In this document: one piece after another, positions 3,640-56,986 of the stretch
How positions within the stretch are numbered: the stretch's first letter is position 1
How the letters are laid out: each line of letters opens with the position of its first letter
Assembly (NCBI RefSeq): GCF_006345805.1
Contig: NC_043008.1
Coordinates: 69,626,001 to 69,690,000, forward strand
Reading direction: 5' to 3'
DNA from: Octopus sinensis
Taxonomy: Eukaryota
DNA length: 64,000 nucleotides
Notes under the pieces: model-generated
Database searches by the model: none
What the model was told of the DNA's origin: nothing
What the model saw: the letters and a program-made list of their open reading frames with translations, nothing else
Program-made: the position numbers and the translations under genes

Positions 3640-3750
3640 ACACACGCATATTAATGTGTGTGCACATATATATATATATATGTGTGTGTGTGTGAATGTA
3701 TGTTTATATGCGTATATATATGTATGTATCTATATCTATATGTATATATA

Positions 3751-3835
<85 letters not shown>

Positions 3836-3854
3836 GTATGTATATGTATATATG

Positions 3855-3922
<68 letters not shown>

Positions 3923-21888: not shown

Positions 21889-22106
21889 AAGCGGCGAGCT
21901 GGCAGACTCGTTAGCACGCCGGGCGAAATGCGTAGCCTTATTTCGTCTGCTGTTACGTTCTGAGTTCAAATTCCGCCGAGGTCGACTTTGTTTTTCATGC
22001 TTTCGGGGTCGATAAATTAAGTACCAGTTACGCCCTGGGGTCGATGTAATCGACATAATCCGTTTGTCCCCTCTGTGTTTAGCCCCTTGTGGGCAGTAGT
22101 GAAATA
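21889..22106 (+). mobile_element. SINE family A, near full length
   Basis: High similarity to 55277-55504. Confidence 0.9.
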
Positions 22107-31056: not shown

Positions 31057-31458
31057 ATATATATATATATGTTAATTCACTTGGTGTATACATAGAAATA
31101 TTTATATCTACATTATATGTACACACACACATATATATATAGATATGTACATACACACATACATATTTACATGTATGTATGTGTGAATGTGCGTGAACGT
31201 TAGCAGCAATAGAGTGCTGCATATTCTGGTTTCCGGTACATCTTATCAAATGAGTTTAGAAAGTTCCACGTTGTACGAGAACACTACTTTGACGCGGGGT
31301 TAACACCTCCTTCTCCCTATCTATCAATGATACTTATTTACGGTCCAGTGGATTTAAGTAATGGGAAATTAATTGCCTTGCACAAGTAAACAATGAATTG
31401 TCTGGTCCGAGAACTGAACCCACGTCTTACATTGTGGAACCCAGTACCTAAACCACTA

Positions 31459-31552
<94 letters not shown>

Positions 31553-32637
31553 CCTACCTACCTACCTATATATATATATATATATATATAGGTAGATAGA
31601 TAGATAGGTAGAAAGGTAGATAGATAAATAGATAGAGAGATGGAGAGAGAGAGAGAATGGAAAACAACAATAAGATACGATACGTTTGCAATGAAAGCTA
31701 TAAGTTTGACGCTCAAAGAAATACAGAGTAAATTATGACGTTTCAGATATTTGTACTTCTTCACAATATCGTGTATGACATTTGATCTTGTTTAGACTCG
31801 AACTTACAATACACTGGGCCAGAAGCCAAAGAACTTACTATCGTGGCTATCTTGAGGCGACGTTTATATTTTGCTATTAATTTCGACAGGAAGCTTTCGT
31901 CTTTATGTCTTAAAATATAAAACTAAAATTAAAGCTCACACATAGCACTGGTAAACTCTGTAAAATAAAACAGTAACGTCAACAGTAAGAAGAAAAATTG
32001 CGTCAACAACAGCTAGCTACAATAACAACGACAACAATAACAACAACACTAGACACTACAGCAAGAATAGCTACAACAAGAATAAACGATATTAAAGTGT
32101 AAATACACGAAAATAAGACATACACAAAATGTCCACTTCATCTTCTGCTAATGCGAACATTTCCTTCATTCCATGAGACAGATCGATCTAGAAATCTTTT
32201 AATATTTTCCATTATAAATTTTATGTAAGAAACGGGACAAAGACTGTTTGCAAAGATATGGCAGTGCTACCAATGAATTACTAAGTTCATGTCCAAGATT
32301 GGTTCTTCAAATGACGCAATTTAGATCAAGTGCTGATTTATTTTGCTTTCAAATTCGGAAATTTAAAAGCATTAAAATTTACTAAACCGTATCGCAATGA
32401 ATTTGCGGGTGGTTTATTTTTTTTTTACTATGTATTTATTATATTTTATTACAAGCATGTTTTACTATCTGTTGCTTATGTTTTCTGGTTTTGCTTTTGT
32501 TTCTGTAAACCATTTGGGGGTGTTTTGTTGATTTGTTTTACGTTTTGATTATTTCCTTATATGTTTTTGCCTTATATTTATTCTTTGTAAACTTACGAGA
32601 ATATTAAGTCGGTCTCTGTTGTTTGTGGCTGTATATA

Positions 32638-45910: not shown

Positions 45911-45992
<82 letters not shown>

Positions 45993-46054
45993 TACTAGCA
46001 TAGCTTTCATTCTATCATCTATCATCTATCTATCTATCTATCTCTATACGTGCG

Positions 46055-46093
<39 letters not shown>

Positions 46094-46117
46094 ATATATA
46101 TATATGTATGTATGATG

Positions 46118-49841: not shown

Positions 49842-50857
49842 CAGGGGCTGGACAAAATAATGGAAACACCTAGCATCATAAAATCATGATTTTGAAATAT
49901 CTATAAAACCGTCAAAAGCTTGTTTGTTTTGATGCTTTTTGATTTATTATTAGTGTTACTTAATATGTTTTGCTATCCATCTATCTGTCTGTTCTTTTCA
50001 GATATCATCAAAAAATCTATCGGGCTTTCAAAGAAATCAAATTGTTGGTGCTTATATGGCAGGCGCAAGAATAAAGAAAACAGCCGAAATGTTTGGTGTA
50101 TCAAGAAGTACAGCCTCGAAAATAATGACAGCTTTTGAGAAAGAGGGAAAAACCTCCTCGTCGAAACAAAAATCTGGAAGGAAACCAAAACTTTCAGATA
50201 TGAACCGTCGGACTCTTACACGAATTGTTAGAAAGGATCACAAAAGTACAGCAGAGCTTAATGACCAACTCCAGAACCCATTTTCCACAAAACTGTTCGC
50301 CAGGAGCTGCACAAAGCCGGATTTCACGGGAGGGCTGCAATCAGAAAACCACTACTTTCAAAAACACCTTTCGATTCCCAGACCGGGCGTTGTGAGTGTT
50401 TATTGAGCGAAAACACCTAAAGCTCCACGAGGCTCCGGTAGGGGATGGTGGTGATCCCTGCTGTACTCTTTTATCACAACCTTCTCTCACTCTTACTTCC
50501 TGTTTCTGTTGTACCTGTATTTCAAAGGGCCGGCCTTGTCACTCTCTGTGTCACGCTGAATATCCCTGAGAACTGCGTTAAGGGTACACGTGTCTGTGGA
50601 GTGCTCAGCCACTTACACGTTAATTTCACGAGCAGGCTGTTCCGTTGATTCGGATCAACCGGAACCCTCGTCGTCGTAACCGACGGAGTGCTTCCACTTT
50701 CAAAAACAATCATTGCAAAGCGTTTTGAGTGGAGCAAAACCCTACAGAATTGGTCCCCAGAGCAGTGGGAAAATGTTATTTTCACGGACGAGTCATCCTT
50801 TACCCTATTTCCGACCGCCGGCCGAGTATACGTGTGGAGAAAACCAAAAGAAGCAGT
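49842..50857 (+). mobile_element. Tc1-like transposon, 3'-truncated, transposase pseudogene split by a SINE
   Basis: TIR CAGGGGCTGGACAAAATAATGGAAACACC. Translation FQRNQIVGAYMAG...FGVSRSTAS...SGRKPKL...RKPLLSKT | IIAKRFEWSK...NWSPEQWENVIFTDES...RVYVWRKPKEA. Confidence 0.92.
50367..50695 (+). mobile_element. 5'-truncated tRNA-derived SINE (third family) with 13-bp TSD
   Basis: Flanked by ACTTTCAAAAACA at 50354-66 and 50696-708. Begins with B-box-like TTCGATTCCC. Confidence 0.75.
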
Positions 50858-52213: not shown

Positions 52214-52823
52214 ATCACATAGGTTGTAATTGTTTTCCAGTTTGTATTTTTACAAGCCCAAATCTAAGTCGTACTGACGAAACCTAACGAGCTAGAAACA
52301 AGTGACTATGTGTTTCTAGATGTTAAGCTCGTCATTTTCCTTAGTAGTATGTCAGGTTTGGAGAAATCTTGATTCTTGGAATTATCTTTTCAAGTTGGGA
52401 CAATTAAAATTAACATTTGTTCGTTATGATGTATCTTCTAGTGGGAGAGACAGTTTTAGTAAATCCAAAACTTTTATTGTTTAGTATCGGACATACCAGT
52501 ATTTGTCTGTGTGCATGTGTGTCTGCGTATATTTGTACATGTATGTACATATCTATATATGCATACACACGCGTATAATATATATATATATATATATAAT
52601 TAATCAATATAGGGTGGCAAAAAATTTTGTAGAATTTTTTTGCCACCAGCGGCCTAGTGGGAAAAAATTAAATAGTCATAGACCATTTTTAAGTTCAACA
52701 TAAACAATCAAGGAACGGCCATAATAGGCCATTCACCCACTAGAAATAACAGCCAAAGCTTCAACCGCAAATAAAAATCAATTCCGTAAACCAGGAGAAA
52801 ATTTAAAAAACATTTACCCTGTA

Positions 52824-52930
52824 ATTTCTTATACGATGCACCGTTTCATCTGCTGTTTAATGGTAAACTAACCTGATTAAATTAAATCAAGCCAATCTTC
52901 CATAGGCCCTCAGATTCTTCAGTAAGAAAT
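52824..52930 (-). ncRNA. Type I hammerhead ribozyme in the inverted partial unit
   Basis: Reverse complement of the same motif, intact. Confidence 0.85.
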
Positions 52931-53020
52931 AGCGAGTGCGATGATTTGAAAATTTTTAGGTCAGATATTGCCTTGGCAGGGTCGGAAATGCCTCGTGAAA
53001 ATATCTGTTCCGACCTGGCT

Positions 53021-53126
53021 ATTTCTTACTGAAGAATCTGAGGGCCTATGGAAGATTGGCTTGATTTAATTTAATCAGGTTAGTTTACCATTAACAGCAG
53101 ATGAAACGGTGCATCGTATAAGAAAT
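53021..53126 (+). ncRNA. Type I hammerhead ribozyme, unit 1 (predicted cleavage after 53118)
   Basis: Stem I ATTTCTTA (53021-28)/TAAGAAAT (53119-26); core CTGAAGA (53029-35); stem II ATCTG/CAGAT; GAAA (53103-06); stem III CG-GTGCAT-CG; GTA triplet. Confidence 0.88.
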
Positions 53127-53508
53127 TACAGGGTAAATGTTTTTTAAATTTTCTCCTGTTTACGGAATTGATTTTTATTTGCGGTTGAAGCTTTGGCTGT
53201 TATTTCTAGTGGGTGAATGGCCTATTATTGCCGTTCCTTGATTGTTGATGTTGAACTTAAAAATGGTCTATGACTATTTAATTTTTTCCCACTAGGCCGC
53301 TAGTGGCAAAAAAATTCTACAAAATTTTTTGCCACCCTATATTGATTAATTATGAATTTTCTGGTTAATTCCGTAATGGAATCGACGGCTTATATTTATT
53401 TGCTGCCGATAAATTTGGCGCGAGTGCGATGATTTGAAAATTTTTAGGTCAGATATTGCCTTGGCAGGGTCGGAAATGCCTCGTGAAAATATCTGTTCCG
53501 ACCTGGCT

Positions 53509-53614
53509 ATTTCTTACTGAAGAATCTGAGGGCCTATGGAAGATTGGCTTGATTTAATTTAATCAGGTTAGTTTACCATTAAACAGCAGATGAAACGTGC
53601 ATCGTATAAGAAAT
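53509..53614 (+). ncRNA. Type I hammerhead ribozyme, unit 2 (cleavage after 53606)
   Basis: Same elements as unit 1. One G is missing in stem III/loop (CGTGCATCG), but ACG/CGT pairing is retained. Confidence 0.85.
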
Positions 53615-53996
53615 TACAGGTAAATGTTTTTTAAATTTTCTCCTGGTTTACGGAATTGATTTTTATTTGCGGTTGAAGCTTTGGCTGTTATTTCTAGTGG
53701 GTGAATGGCCTATTATTGCCGTTCCTTGATTGTTGATGTTGAACTTAAAAATGGTCTATGACTATTTAATTTTTTCCCACTAGGCCGCTGGTGGCAAAAA
53801 AATTCTACAAAATTTTTTGCCACCCTATATTGATTAATTATGAATTTTCTGGTTAATTCCGTAATGGAATCGACGGCTTATATTTATTTGCTGCCGATAA
53901 ATTTGGCGCGAGTGCGATGATTTGAAAATTTTTAGGTCAGATATTGCCTTGGCAGGGTCGGAAATGCCTCGTGAAAATATCTGTTCCGACCTGGCT

Positions 53997-54103
53997 ATTT
54001 CTTACTGAAGAATCTGAGGGCCTATGGAAGATTGGCTTGATTTAATTTAATCAGGTTAGTTTACCATTAAACAGCAGATGAAACGGTGCATCGTATAAGA
54101 AAT
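53997..54103 (+). ncRNA. Type I hammerhead ribozyme, unit 3 (cleavage after 54095)
   Basis: ATTTCTTA-CTGAAGA-ATCTG...CAGAT-GAAA-CGGTGCATCG-TA-TAAGAAAT intact. Confidence 0.88.
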
Positions 54104-54486
54104 TACAGGGTAAATGTTTTTTAAATTTTCTCCTGGTTTACGGAATTGATTTTTATTTGCGGTTGAAGCTTTGGCTGTTATTTCTAGTGGGTGAATGGCC
54201 TATTATTGCCGTTCCTTGATTGTTGATGTTGAACTTAAAAATGGTCTATGACTATTTAATTTTTTCCCACTAGGCCGCTAGTGGCAAAAAAATTCTACAA
54301 AATTTTTTGCCACCCTATATTGATTAATTATGAATTTTCTGGTTAATTCCGTAATGGAATCGACGGCTTATATTTATTTGCTGCCGATAAATTTGGCGCG
54401 AGTGCGATGATTTGAAAATTTTTAGGTCAGATATTGCCTTGGCAGGGTCGGAAATGCCTCGTGAAAATATCTGTTCCGACCTGGCT

Positions 54487-54592
54487 ATTTCTTACTGAAG
54501 AATCTGAGGGCCTATGGAAGATTGGCTTGATTTAATTTAATCAGGTTAGTTTACCATTAACAGCAGATGAAACGGTGCATCGTATAAGAAAT
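54487..54592 (+). ncRNA. Type I hammerhead ribozyme, unit 4 (cleavage after 54584)
   Basis: All core nucleotides and three stems intact. Confidence 0.88.
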
Positions 54593-54971
54593 TACAGGGT
54601 AAATGTTTTTTAAATTTTCTCCTGTTTACGGAATTGATTTTTATTGCGGTTGAAGCTTTGGCTGTTATTTCTAGTGGTGAATGGCCTATTATTGCCGTTC
54701 CTTGATTGTTGATGTTGAACTTAAAAATGGTCTATGACTATTTAATTTTTTCCCACTAGGCCGCTGGTGGCAAAAAAATTCTACAAAATTTTTTGCCACC
54801 CTATATGATTAATTATGAATTTTCTGGTTAATTCCGTAATGGAATCGACGGCTTATATTTATTTGCTGCCGATAAATTTGGCGCGAGTGCGATGATTTGA
54901 AAATTTTTAGGTCAGATATTGCCTTGGCAGGGTCGGAAATGCCTCGTGAAAATATCTGTTCCGACCTGGCT

Positions 54972-55078
54972 ATTTCTTACTGAAGAATCTGAGGGCCTAT
55001 GGAAGATTGGCTTGATTTAATTTAATCAGGTTAGTTTACCATTAAACAGCAGATGAAACGGTGCATCGTATAAGAAAT
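54972..55078 (+). ncRNA. Type I hammerhead ribozyme, unit 5 (cleavage after 55070)
   Basis: All core nucleotides and three stems intact. Confidence 0.88.
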
Positions 55079-55198
55079 TACAGGGTAAATGTTTTTTAAA
55101 TTTTCTCCTGGTTTACGGAATTGATTTTTATTTGCGGTTGAAGCTTTGGCTGTTATTTCTAGTGGGTGAATGGCCTATTATGGCCGTTCCTTGATTGT

Positions 55199-55234
<36 letters not shown>

Positions 55235-55276
55235 GCGTGTGTATGCATATATAGATATGTACATATATATATATAT

Positions 55277-55499
55277 AGGCGGCGAGCTGGCAGAAACGTT
55301 AGCATGCCGGGCGAAATGCTTAGCGGTATTTTGTCTGCCGCTACGTTCTGAGTTCAAATTCCGCCGAGGTCGACTTTGCCTTTCATCCTTTCGGGGTCGA
55401 TAAATTAAGTACCAGTTCACTGGGGTCGATGTAATCGACTTAATCCGTTGTCTGTCCTTATTTGTCCCGTCTGTGTTTAGCCCCTTGTGGGTAGTAAAG

Positions 55500-55811: not shown

Positions 55812-56986
55812 TGTTGTAGCGAGAGTCACGACACCCACTACGAGAATAGACTGACAGAACTAATAACGGTCTGAGTGAGCTGACAGAGAATATGCTTTAA
55901 TCGCAGGAAGTCGCAAGGTGTCATTTTGGTAGTTTGTCGTTTATGGGTTCGTGTATAGTTGTGGAGAGTTTGTTGGATTGTTACGTTCTTGTTACCCTGC
56001 TTCGTTATATATTTTATTGTTACTGCATGGTTATAGTGTGAAAAAGTATTGTCATGACAATTAGCGATGCAACAATATTGGCGACGAAGATTCGAAGCTC
56101 ACGCAAGTTATTTAACACATTTTTGTGATACAAAGTTGTTAATTATGGAAGAACTATTAGCTTCTATAATTTATTTGCAAATGCAACAACAAGAACAGCC
56201 ACTGGAGTTGCAGAAACAACTACTACAGCAATAAGAAACCCATGTTACGGATGTGGAGGCCTACATTTCAAGAAGGACCGTCCTTTCAAAACGCAGGAAT
56301 GTTACAGTTGCCCCCAAAATAGGACACAAGAGCTCACATTGCAGAGTAAAGTTAGGAAGATTGAAGATGAAAAATTCTAAAGTGTTCTCAACTGAAAGTA
56401 GAAACGACACCAAAAAGAGGGAATTTGTACATGTAAAAGTAAACGAAGTGAATGTGATATTACAACTAGGTACTGGAAGCGACATTTCGATTATTGATAC
56501 CGACACGTGGGAAATAATTGGGAAATCTACGCTAAGAAAAACAGTGAAAATTGAGCGAGGCGTAACAGGTAAAAAACTACACTTCGTAAGCGAAATGTGG
56601 AGTGATATTACATTCCGTGGTAAAACCTGTAGAGCAAAAGTTTTCGTATTAAGAAATGCAACTAATCTGTTCGGTACGGACTGGATGAAGTTGTTTGACT
56701 TATGGGACCTCCCCATAAGTCTGTACTGTGAAAAAAATAAACGTCTGCCTCACCAGTAAAATAAGCGTCTGGCCACACCAGTAGAAAAGGGAGTGTAGGT
56801 GTAAATCGCAGGAAGTCGTAAGGTATCCTTTTGGTAGTTTGTCGGAATGTCGTTTGTTAGTTCGTGTATAGTTCGTGGAGAGTTTGTTGGATTGTTATGT
56901 TGTTATTTGCTTCGTTATATACTTAATTGTTACTTCACGGTTATGGTGTAAAAAAAAGCATCGTCATAACAATTGGCGATACAACA
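55812..56986 (+). mobile_element. Internally deleted Gypsy (Mag-like) LTR retrotransposon
   Basis: Termini TGTTG...CAACA, AGTTCA on both flanks, 5' LTR 55812-56074, PBS TGGCGACGA (56079-87), PPT AGAAAAGGGAG, 3' LTR 56794-56986. Gag start MEELLAS, knuckles CYGCGGLH / CYSCPKIGHKSSHC, protease. No RT or IN. Confidence 0.88.
56253..56759 (+). pseudogene. Retrotransposon gag zinc knuckle / aspartic protease fragment
   Basis: VHVKVNEVNVILQLGTGSDISII ... LFGTDW. The catalytic D of D(T/S)G is replaced by G. Confidence 0.8.

What the first reader, a model, noticed from the sequence alone, without database searches (positions are those of the whole stretch)
52596..55200. Tandem ~488-bp array with a complete type I hammerhead ribozyme in every unit: candidate cephalopod retrozyme / circular-RNA element
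Seen in sequence: five direct copies and one inverted copy of ATTTCTTA-CTGAAGA-ATCTG(~57 nt)CAGAT-GAAA-CGGTGCATCG-TA-TAAGAAAT. It has all conserved hammerhead core positions, a perfect 8-bp stem I, a 5-bp stem II and a GUA cleavage triplet. Predicted cleavage at 53118, 53606, 54095, 54584 and 55070 would release monomers of 488, 489, 489 and 486 nt. No ORF. Established: non-LTR retrozymes in metazoans are non-coding tandem repeats with type I hammerheads that are processed into circular RNAs and are thought to use Penelope-like RT. Inference: this is such an element. Its monomer is longer than the roughly 170-400 nt I recall for animal retrozymes, and I do not recall a description in octopus (not searched). 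Near-identity of the units suggests recent amplification.
Basis: partly seen in the sequence, partly recalled or inferred. Interest (0 to 1): 0.93.

Follow-up and report, generated by a model that had tools for sequence, protein, structure and literature searches.

The report
Hammerhead-ribozyme tandem repeat (retrozyme-like element)
A non-coding 490-bp DNA repeat, present as about five head-to-tail copies plus one inverted partial copy, carries in every copy a complete self-cleaving hammerhead ribozyme motif, so it is most likely an undescribed member of the known animal "retrozyme" family of mobile elements that spread through small circular RNAs.

Summary
Window 52596-55202 holds a direct array of 4.6 units (consensus 490 nt, 36% GC, no ORF above 36 aa) preceded by a 341-nt inverted partial unit. 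All six copies carry a complete type I hammerhead: core CUGAAGA...GAAA, A15.1-U16.1, GUA cut site, helices of 8, 5 and 3-4 bp.

Limits on the ribozyme call:
- No Rfam hammerhead model matches it, even at E<=10 on 151 nt.
- All copies are about 99% identical, so conservation or covariation cannot be tested.
- No related copy was found in any collection I could reach.
- Cleavage, circles and mobility are inferred, not shown.

The best reading is a non-LTR retrozyme-type element, a known kind described in mussels, corals and amphibians. No paper in the held library reports one in a cephalopod, and the host species could not be verified. The 490-nt size is not unusual, since published consensus lengths span 51-972 bp.

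New here: helix II carries a 56-57-nt structured extension. The locus also shows the insertion pattern of Penelope-like elements: head-to-tail copies, an inverted 5'-truncated copy joined head-to-head, and (TA)n on both sides. A 36-nt perfect inverted repeat outside the TA tracts is unexplained.

The parts
52542..52577 (.). Left copy (F) of a 36-nt perfect inverted repeat lying outside the TA tract
   Evidence: Exact reverse complement of 55230-55265. Beyond it the two flanks are unrelated.
52578..52598 (.). (TA)n tract at the left edge of the element
   Evidence: Sequence; listed as a pure TA tract.
52596..52933 (-). Inverted, 5'-truncated partial unit (consensus 386-490 followed by 1-236; 341 nt)
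   Evidence: 99% complementary to the direct units (I1-I10). Identical over 237 nt to the right-terminal copy, including the shared variant TATGGCC.
52824..52930 (-). Hammerhead copy on the minus strand (helix I 5' strand to helix I 3' strand); predicted cut between 52832 and 52831
52932..55202 (+). Direct head-to-tail array: consensus 303-490, then four full units (53119-53606, 53607-54095, 54096-54584, 54585-55070), then consensus 1-132
   Evidence: The head-to-head junction with the inverted arm shares 2 nt (GC) at 52932-52933.
53021..53126 (+). Hammerhead copy 1; cut after A53118
53509..53614 (+). Hammerhead copy 2 (helix III shortened by a 1-nt deletion); cut after A53606
53997..54103 (+). 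Hammerhead copy 3; cut after A54095. Helix I is extended by CCUG (53990-53993) pairing with CAGG (54106-54109) across a 3x2 internal loop
54487..54592 (+). Hammerhead copy 4; cut after A54584
54972..55078 (+). Hammerhead copy 5; cut after A55070
55201..55229 (.). (TA)n tract at the right edge of the element
   Evidence: Sequence.
55230..55265 (.). Right copy (F') of the 36-nt perfect inverted repeat
   Evidence: It is followed directly by a SINE-like repeat starting near 55278.

Best explanation
This is a non-autonomous, non-coding retroelement of the metazoan non-LTR retrozyme type.

Shown here:
- A head-to-tail array of a 490-nt AT-rich unit with no ORF.
- A complete type I hammerhead motif in every unit, on one strand only.
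- A strongly structured RNA on that strand.
- An insertion architecture of Penelope-like element (PLE) type.

Inferred from the published family:
- The array is transcribed as a multimer.
- Each hammerhead cuts after GUA (A17), leaving U1.1 with a 5'-OH and a 2',3'-cyclic phosphate on the upstream end. This releases 490-nt monomers.
- Helix III is short (3-4 bp) and CGGUGCAUCG is self-complementary. Two hammerheads of one multimer can therefore pair into a double hammerhead with a continuous 12-bp helix III, as in newt and axolotl repeats.
- A host RtcB-type tRNA ligase closes the monomer into a circle.
- The circle or multimer is copied by the reverse transcriptase of a PLE and inserted at an AT-rich or (TA)n target. 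Both DNA strands are primed, which leaves several head-to-tail copies plus an inverted 5'-truncated copy joined head-to-head.
For: Motif:
- All core positions are present: C3 U4 G5 A6 A7 G8 A9, G12 A13 A14, A15.1-U16.1, C15.2-G16.2 and H17=A.
- Helix I is a perfect 8 bp, extended by 4 more bp across an internal loop. Helix II has 5 bp next to the core.
- All six motifs in the 64 kb lie in the array. Shuffles gave 0.005 hits per window at much weaker helices.

Folding:
- The catalytically competent fold is only 1.5 kcal/mol above the minimum free energy fold.
- Two copies co-fold into a double hammerhead at -91.3 kcal/mol, against 2 x -38.5.
- CGGUGCAUCG pairs with itself at -14.1 kcal/mol on this strand, against -5.9 for the complement.

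Strand asymmetry:
- The unit folds at -141.7 kcal/mol (z -4.6) on the + strand and -101.8 (z -3.6) on the - strand.
- Helix II folds at -24.4 with 5 G.U pairs, against -10.4 for its complement.
- The circular fold has 24 G.U pairs among 143 pairs on + and 6 among 126 on -.

Family features:
- Unit 490 nt, GC 36%, no ORF above 36 aa. This matches PMC7229834 (tandem repeats with type I hammerheads, low GC, no LTR, PBS or PPT; molluscs included) and 10.64898/2026.07.22.740005 (consensus 51-972 bp; derived from PLE pseudo-LTRs).

Architecture:
- Inverted 5'-truncated copy at the 5' end, joined head-to-head with 2-nt microhomology; (TA)n on both sides.
- This matches the PLE insertion pattern in PMC3846280 and PMC8557442.
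- It also matches the in vitro finding that a PLE protein cleaves and extends both strands at AT-rich DNA (PMC11167929).
Against: - No Rfam hammerhead family matches at gathering score, at E<=10 on 3 kb, or at E<=10 on 151 nt. The likely causes are the 56-57-nt insert in helix II and A10.1-U11.1 in place of the usual G-C, but I could not verify this.
- The copies are about 99% identical, and two of the eight indels fall in the hammerhead. There is no evidence that the ribozyme is conserved better than the rest.
- No other copy exists in the window.
- No related sequence was found in metagenome contigs or in the protein collection.
- No RT or GIY-YIG ORF was found in the window ORFs I scanned.
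- By extrapolation, a motif of this quality is expected about once per 2.5-Gb genome by chance.
- The canonical loop-loop contact of type I hammerheads cannot be recognised here, because helix II is a long rod.
- There are no expression data.
Confidence: 0.75

Rival explanations
1. This is an ordinary minisatellite or satellite repeat that contains a hammerhead-like motif by chance. The array grew by unequal crossing-over, and no ribozyme activity or RNA intermediate is involved.
For: All Rfam hammerhead models fail to match. The base of helix II is A-U rather than G-C. The copies show no differential conservation. Extrapolation gives about one chance motif of this quality per 2.5-Gb genome, and the first-stage scan may have looked at many windows.
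Against: A chance motif would also have to fall inside a tandem repeat of retrozyme-like size and composition. It would further need a 4-bp extension of helix I, a self-complementary helix III and loop, and a stable G.U-rich helix II that exists only on the same strand. It would also have to sit in a PLE-like insertion architecture. Taken together these are far less likely than the core motif alone.
Confidence: 0.1
2. The repeat is not an independent retrozyme family. It is an array of solo pseudo-LTRs of an autonomous hammerhead-bearing Penelope-like element whose coding part lies elsewhere or was lost.
For: PLE pseudo-LTRs carry type I hammerheads and form tandem and inverted structures (PMC3846280, PMC8557442). 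In Xenopus, retrozymes are sister to PLE pseudo-LTRs (10.64898/2026.07.22.740005). The locus architecture is PLE-like.
Against: No RT or GIY-YIG ORF was found in the window ORFs scanned. According to PMC7761336, PLE hammerheads are usually minimal variants that lack helix III, whereas this one has 3-4 bp plus a loop and long helices I and II. Four and a half consecutive non-coding units fit a retrozyme better. The two readings overlap if retrozymes derive from pseudo-LTRs.
Confidence: 0.12
3. The inverted arm and the inverted 36-nt flank do not come from retrotransposition. They come from a DNA-level inverted duplication (replication template switch) or a local misassembly of long reads. Only the direct array is original.
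For: The 36-nt repeat F lies outside the TA tracts, which simple target-primed insertion does not predict. The arms are identical over 237 + 36 nt. Eight of the nine unit differences are 1-nt deletions in runs of a repeated base, typical of uncorrected long reads. PMC8557442 notes that such structures cause assembly problems.
Against: The inverted segment is bounded. Beyond F the two flanks are unrelated, which is unlike a palindromic chimeric read. The two arms end at different unit positions, consensus 236 and 132. An inverted 5'-truncated copy joined head-to-head is the published norm for PLE-type insertions (PMC3846280).
Confidence: 0.3

Closest known systems
Metazoan non-LTR retrozymes (Cervera and de la Pena 2020, PMC7229834; mussel Mytilus galloprovincialis, coral Acropora millepora, axolotl)
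   Same: Head-to-tail repeats of a few hundred bp with low GC. No ORF, LTR, PBS or PPT. One type I hammerhead per unit on one strand only. Highly self-paired unit RNA. Weak helix III that allows dimeric action.
   Different: Helix II carries a 56-57-nt structured extension instead of a short stem and loop. The pair 10.1-11.1 is A-U. No Rfam model matches. Expression and circles are untested. The host is presumably a cephalopod, for which the held literature reports none.
[quoted passage not shown]
   Same: Type I hammerhead. Partial tandems. An adjacent inverted 5'-truncated copy joined head-to-head. An AT-rich or (TA)n target. No clear target-site duplication.
   Different: No RT-EN ORF is present. 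PLE hammerheads are mostly minimal, with no helix III. The published 30-40-bp tail is element sequence at one end, whereas here a 36-nt sequence sits at both ends, inverted and outside the TA tracts. The two arms end 104 nt apart in the unit, not 30-40 nt.
Classical satellite hammerheads: newt satellite 2, Schistosoma Sm-alpha, cave-cricket pDo500 (from my own knowledge; cited within PMC7229834 and PMC7761336)
   Same: Tandem genomic repeats transcribed into self-cleaving multimers. Short helix III with a palindromic loop, active as double hammerheads.
   Different: Unrelated sequence, a longer unit than newt satellite 2, and a long helix II.
Plant LTR retrozymes (PMC4918200)
   Same: Non-autonomous elements whose hammerheads release a unit RNA that circularises and serves as the retrotransposition intermediate.
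   Different: The plant elements have type III hammerheads inside LTRs, a PBS and PPT, GC above 55%, 4-bp target-site duplications, and are mobilised by Ty3/Gypsy elements.

Membership tests
Hammerhead ribozyme, type I | Conserved catalytic core CUGANGA ... GAAA with A15.1-U16.1 and H17 not G | tested here: met
   CUGAAGA, GAAA, A15.1-U16.1, C15.2-G16.2 and A17 are present in all six copies.
Hammerhead ribozyme, type I | Three helices around the core, with helices II and III closed and helix I open | tested here: met
   Helices of 8/5/4 bp. The minimum free energy fold recovers helices I and II. The full active fold is +1.5 kcal/mol above it.
Hammerhead ribozyme, type I | Purine-pyrimidine pair at 10.1-11.1, nearly always G-C | tested here: inconclusive
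   The pair is A10.1-U11.1 in all copies. It is purine-pyrimidine but not the usual G-C. The effect on rate is unknown.
Hammerhead ribozyme, type I | Match to the curated covariance models (Rfam Hammerhead_1 and relatives) | tested here: not met
   No hammerhead family was reported at gathering score on the window, at E<=10 on 3 kb, or at E<=10 on 151 nt.
Hammerhead ribozyme, type I | Tertiary contact between helix I and helix II loops | not testable with these tools
   The internal loops lie at equal distance from the core: 8 stacked pairs on helix I (GCU/UA) and on helix II (GCCU/UAAA). This is suggestive only.
Hammerhead ribozyme, type I | Conservation or covariation of core and helices among diverged copies | tested here: inconclusive
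   Only copies about 99% identical are available. There are none elsewhere in the window or in the reachable collections.
Hammerhead ribozyme, type I | Mg2+-dependent self-cleavage at the predicted site | not testable with these tools
   Needs in vitro transcription.
Metazoan non-LTR retrozyme | Head-to-tail tandem repeats of tens to hundreds of bp, each with one type I hammerhead | tested here: met
   4.6 direct units of 486-489 nt (consensus 490), each with one motif. Published ranges are 150-450 bp (PMC7229834) and 51-972 bp (10.64898/2026.07.22.740005).
Metazoan non-LTR retrozyme | Low GC, non-coding, no LTR, PBS or PPT | tested here: met
   GC is 36%. The longest ORF inside a unit is 36 aa. 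No LTR structure was seen. PBS and PPT were not searched for specifically.
Metazoan non-LTR retrozyme | Unit RNA predicted to be highly self-paired | tested here: met
   Linear fold -141.7 kcal/mol, z -4.6. Circular fold -136.1 kcal/mol with 58% of bases paired.
Metazoan non-LTR retrozyme | Expressed as unit-length linear and circular RNA | not testable with these tools
   No transcriptome of the host is available here.
Metazoan non-LTR retrozyme | Many dispersed genomic loci (mobility) | not testable with these tools
PLE-mediated insertion | Partial or multiple tandem copies plus an adjacent inverted 5'-truncated copy joined head-to-head | tested here: met
   A 341-nt inverted arm abuts the 5' end of the direct array with 2-nt microhomology.
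PLE-mediated insertion | AT-rich or (TA)n target site | tested here: met
   (TA)n lies directly at both outer ends, at 52578-52598 and 55201-55229.
PLE-mediated insertion | Optional 30-40-bp tail at one end; short target-site duplication | tested here: inconclusive
   A 36-nt sequence sits at both ends, inverted and outside the TA tracts. No target-site duplication can be discerned in the low-complexity flanks.

The most novel reading that the evidence does not exclude
This would be the first cephalopod retrozyme lineage. It would carry a hammerhead variant with a long structured helix II and an A10.1-U11.1 pair, which current covariance models cannot see. Its insertion scars are an inverted head-to-head arm, (TA)n targets, and outer ends at two similar 12-mers (UUGAUUNNUNAU). 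These scars would directly record dual-strand, internally initiated reverse transcription of a ribozyme-processed RNA by a Penelope-like enzyme. That would make the open question of which enzyme mobilises animal retrozymes testable from the junctions of this family alone.
Probability: 0.3. Interest if true: 0.55.

Novelty: new member of a known kind. Interest (0 to 1): 0.4.

Why it matters
Animal retrozymes are abundant sources of small circular RNAs. Their mobilising enzyme is still only inferred, from co-occurrence with Penelope-like elements and from sequence similarity to their pseudo-LTRs.

A family in a new host clade that shows Penelope-type insertion scars would add independent structural support for that link.

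The failure of every Rfam hammerhead model also matters. Hammerheads with long helix II inserts are missed by standard annotation, so retrozyme surveys that rely on covariance models may undercount them.

If the element is active, its 490-nt unit would be a natural scaffold for circular RNA expression.

Tried and rejected
- **Rfam.** I ran it at gathering score on the whole window and at E<=10 on 3 kb and on 151 nt. No hammerhead or other ribozyme family matched on either strand. The sub-threshold miRNA hits (MIR1031, mir-297, mir-466) only reflect the long inverted repeat and the low-complexity TA/TG flanks.
- **Metagenome contigs.** I scanned for the family-specific hammerhead pattern. The 26 hits are all unrelated, apparently coding, DNA with no similarity to the unit and no helices I or III. 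They are chance matches.
- **Exact look-up.** I looked up the three unit ORFs (33-36 aa) in the assembly collection. None was found.
- **Six-frame protein search.** I searched a composite six-frame translation of the unit against 5.8 billion proteins. There were no hits.
- **Other copies in the window.** blastn and nhmmer with the consensus found none outside the array.
- **PLE genes nearby.** Pfam scans of window ORFs found no RT or GIY-YIG domain, only a Tc1/mariner-type HTH.
- **Host identification.** The Tc1-like ORF gave only 54-70% identical, unnamed ENA proteins. One source contig shares no other repeat with the window. Ten window ORFs are not in the protein collection. ARAGORN finds no tRNA. 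The cephalopod origin remains unverified.
- **Palindromic TA sites.** I tested whether TA tracts in this window usually sit in non-trivial palindromes. Palindromic compound microsatellites are common, but they consist of simple motifs, unlike the 36-nt repeat F.
- **Two-polarity viroid-like RNA.** Rejected, because there is no ribozyme motif on the complementary strand of the units.
Full report
**What is there**

Window 52596-55202 contains a direct head-to-tail array at 52932-55202. It consists of consensus positions 303-490, four full units, and then consensus 1-132. A 341-nt inverted partial unit at 52596-52933 precedes it.

The majority consensus of the unit is 490 nt with 36% GC. The four full units measure 488, 489, 489 and 486 nt. 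They differ from the consensus by eight 1-nt deletions in runs of a repeated base and one G/A polymorphism. This looks like long-read assembly noise, so the real monomer is probably a uniform 490 nt. No ORF inside a unit exceeds 36 aa.

**The hammerhead**

Each of the five direct copies and the inverted copy reads AUUUCUUA-CUGAAGA-AUCUG[56-57 nt]CAGAU-GAAA-CGGUGCAUCG-UA-UAAGAAAU.

In standard numbering this gives:
- C3 U4 G5 A6 A7 G8 A9
- A10.1-U11.1 at the base of a 5-bp helix II
- G12 A13 A14
- A15.1-U16.1, C15.2-G16.2 and G15.3-C16.3, plus a G.U pair, in helix III
- A17 as the cleavage nucleotide
- a perfect 8-bp helix I

Helix I continues for 4 more bp (CCUG/CAGG) after a 3x2 internal loop. 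The helix II insert folds into a long irregular hairpin.

My own descriptor (core, helices >=5/4/3, helix II insert up to 100 nt) finds exactly these six sites in the 64 kb. They score 8/5/4, and 8/5/3 in copy 2, which lacks one G. It found 1 hit in 200 dinucleotide shuffles of the window, and 7 hits at >=4/3/2. Scaling to 8/5/4 gives about 1e-5 to 4e-5 per window, or roughly one chance motif per 2.5-Gb genome. The motif is strong evidence but not proof on its own.

**Additional features that point the same way**

- The catalytically competent fold lies only 1.5 kcal/mol above the minimum free energy structure of the 128-nt region.
- CGGUGCAUCG is self-complementary when G.U pairs are allowed. 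Two hammerhead regions co-fold into a double hammerhead with a continuous 12-bp helix III, at -91.3 kcal/mol against 2 x -38.5. This is the arrangement through which newt and axolotl repeats cleave (PMC7229834).
- The structure is specific to one strand. The self-duplex of the helix III segment is -14.1 kcal/mol on this strand and -5.9 on the complement. Helix II is -24.4 with 5 G.U pairs, against -10.4. The whole unit is -141.7 (z -4.6) against -101.8 (z -3.6). The circular fold uses 24 G.U pairs on + and 6 on -.
- No ribozyme motif exists on the complementary strand of the units. This fits retrozymes and not viroid-like RNAs with two polarities.

**What argues for caution**

- Rfam reports no hammerhead family at gathering score, at E<=10 on 3 kb, or at E<=10 on a 151-nt slice. 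I attribute this to the 56-57-nt helix II insert and the A-U pair at 10.1-11.1. I could not verify this, because custom sequences cannot be submitted to that tool.
- The copies are about 99% identical, and two of the eight indels lie in the hammerhead.
- I found no related sequence anywhere else. This covers the rest of the window, metagenome contigs (26 chance hits), exact ORF look-ups and a six-frame protein search.
- Cleavage, circularisation, expression and copy number remain untested.

**The locus architecture**

The reverse complement of the inverted arm is identical to the right-terminal copy over 237 nt. The identity includes a variant, TATGGCC, that the internal units lack. The arm meets the direct array head-to-head with 2 nt of microhomology at 52932-52933.

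Both outer ends run straight into (TA)n. The left arm ends at ...TTGATTAATTAT (consensus ~236). The right arm ends at ...TTGATTGTTGAT (consensus ~132). These two similar 12-mers lie 104 nt apart in the unit.

The published signature of Penelope-like element insertions is:
- partial or multicopy tandems
- an adjacent inverted 5'-truncated copy joined head-to-head
- a microsatellite or (TA)n target
- often no discernible target-site duplication (PMC3846280, PMC8557442)

A purified PLE protein cleaves and extends both strands of AT-rich DNA and starts reverse transcription at internal RNA sites (PMC11167929). The locus fits this signature. That gives structural support to the proposal that PLE enzymes mobilise retrozymes (PMC7229834, PMC7761336, bioRxiv 10.64898/2026.07.22.740005).

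I found no RT or GIY-YIG ORF in the window ORFs I scanned, as expected for a non-autonomous element. PMC8557442 notes that the Naiad PLEs of cephalopods are old remnants, so the partner would have to be another clade.

**What stays unexplained**

A 36-nt perfect inverted repeat, TATACGCGTGTGTATGCATATATAGATATGTACATA, lies outside the two TA tracts at 52542-52577 and 55230-55265. Beyond it the flanks are unrelated. It could be one of three things:
- A pre-existing palindromic site. Palindromic compound microsatellites are common in this window, but F is not a simple repeat.
- 3' read-through sequence of a donor array, copied from the same start on both strands. In that case the right arm later lost consensus 133-236.
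- A DNA-level inverted duplication or a local misassembly.

One locus cannot decide among these.

**Comparison with what is known**

The element works like, and structurally qualifies as, a metazoan non-LTR retrozyme. That family is described for corals, mussels, amphibians and many other invertebrates (PMC7229834).

Its size is within published ranges: 150-450 bp, and 51-972 bp in the 2026 preprint.

No paper in the held library links hammerheads or retrozymes with octopus or cephalopods. I could not confirm the host.

**Verdict**

This is a new member of a known kind. It has two points of modest interest: a hammerhead with a long helix II that covariance models miss, and a PLE-type insertion scar.

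Confidence that it is a genuine hammerhead-bearing retrozyme-type element is 0.75. Interest is 0.4.

Noticed in passing
52542-52577 and 55230-55265: A 36-nt perfect inverted repeat lies outside the (TA)n tracts that bracket the array. Beyond it the flanks are unrelated. Simple target-primed insertion does not predict this.
   Followed up: partly
52596-52933 with 53021-53353: The inverted arm and the first direct copy form a 341-nt near-perfect inverted repeat with a spacer of about 85 nt. Read-through transcription would give a long double-stranded RNA hairpin, a possible small-RNA source. The sub-threshold Rfam MIR1031 hit (49 bits, gathering score 100) only reflects this hairpin.
   Followed up: no
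53119-55070: Eight of the nine differences among the four full units are 1-nt deletions in runs of a repeated base. This suggests residual long-read assembly errors. The true unit is probably 490 nt throughout.
   Followed up: yes
52596-52612 and 55189-55202: The two outer ends of the element fall at similar 12-mers of the unit, TTGATTAATTAT and TTGATTGTTGAT, 104 nt apart. They could be alternative reverse-transcription start sites or the end points of a later deletion.
   Followed up: partly
55278-55480; also near 21893, 35301 and 47213: Four copies of a SINE-like repeat starting GGCGAGCTGGCAGAAACGTTAGCA. One directly abuts the right flank of the element. ARAGORN calls no tRNA in the window.
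   Followed up: partly
49954-50403 (+), perhaps continuing to 50939: A decayed Tc1/mariner-type transposase. It matches Pfam HTH_23 and HTH_28, and Sleeping Beauty HTH below its cut-off. The closest database proteins are 54-70% identical.
   Followed up: partly
whole window, e.g. 31453-31660, 45917-46102, 3666-3917: Microsatellite density is very high, with at least 169 tandem-repeat rows (the tool's count of overlapping rows). Several are palindromic compound microsatellites such as (TATC)n next to (GATA)n.
   Followed up: partly
52507-52591 and 55201-55283: Sub-threshold Rfam hits to mir-297, mir-466 and mir-1277 lie on the TA/TG-rich flanks. They are low-complexity hairpins, not credible miRNA genes.
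   Followed up: no
56129-56377 (+): An ORF fragment reads CYGCGGLHFKKD, which resembles a degenerate CCHC zinc knuckle of a retroelement Gag. Pfam gives no support.
   Followed up: partly
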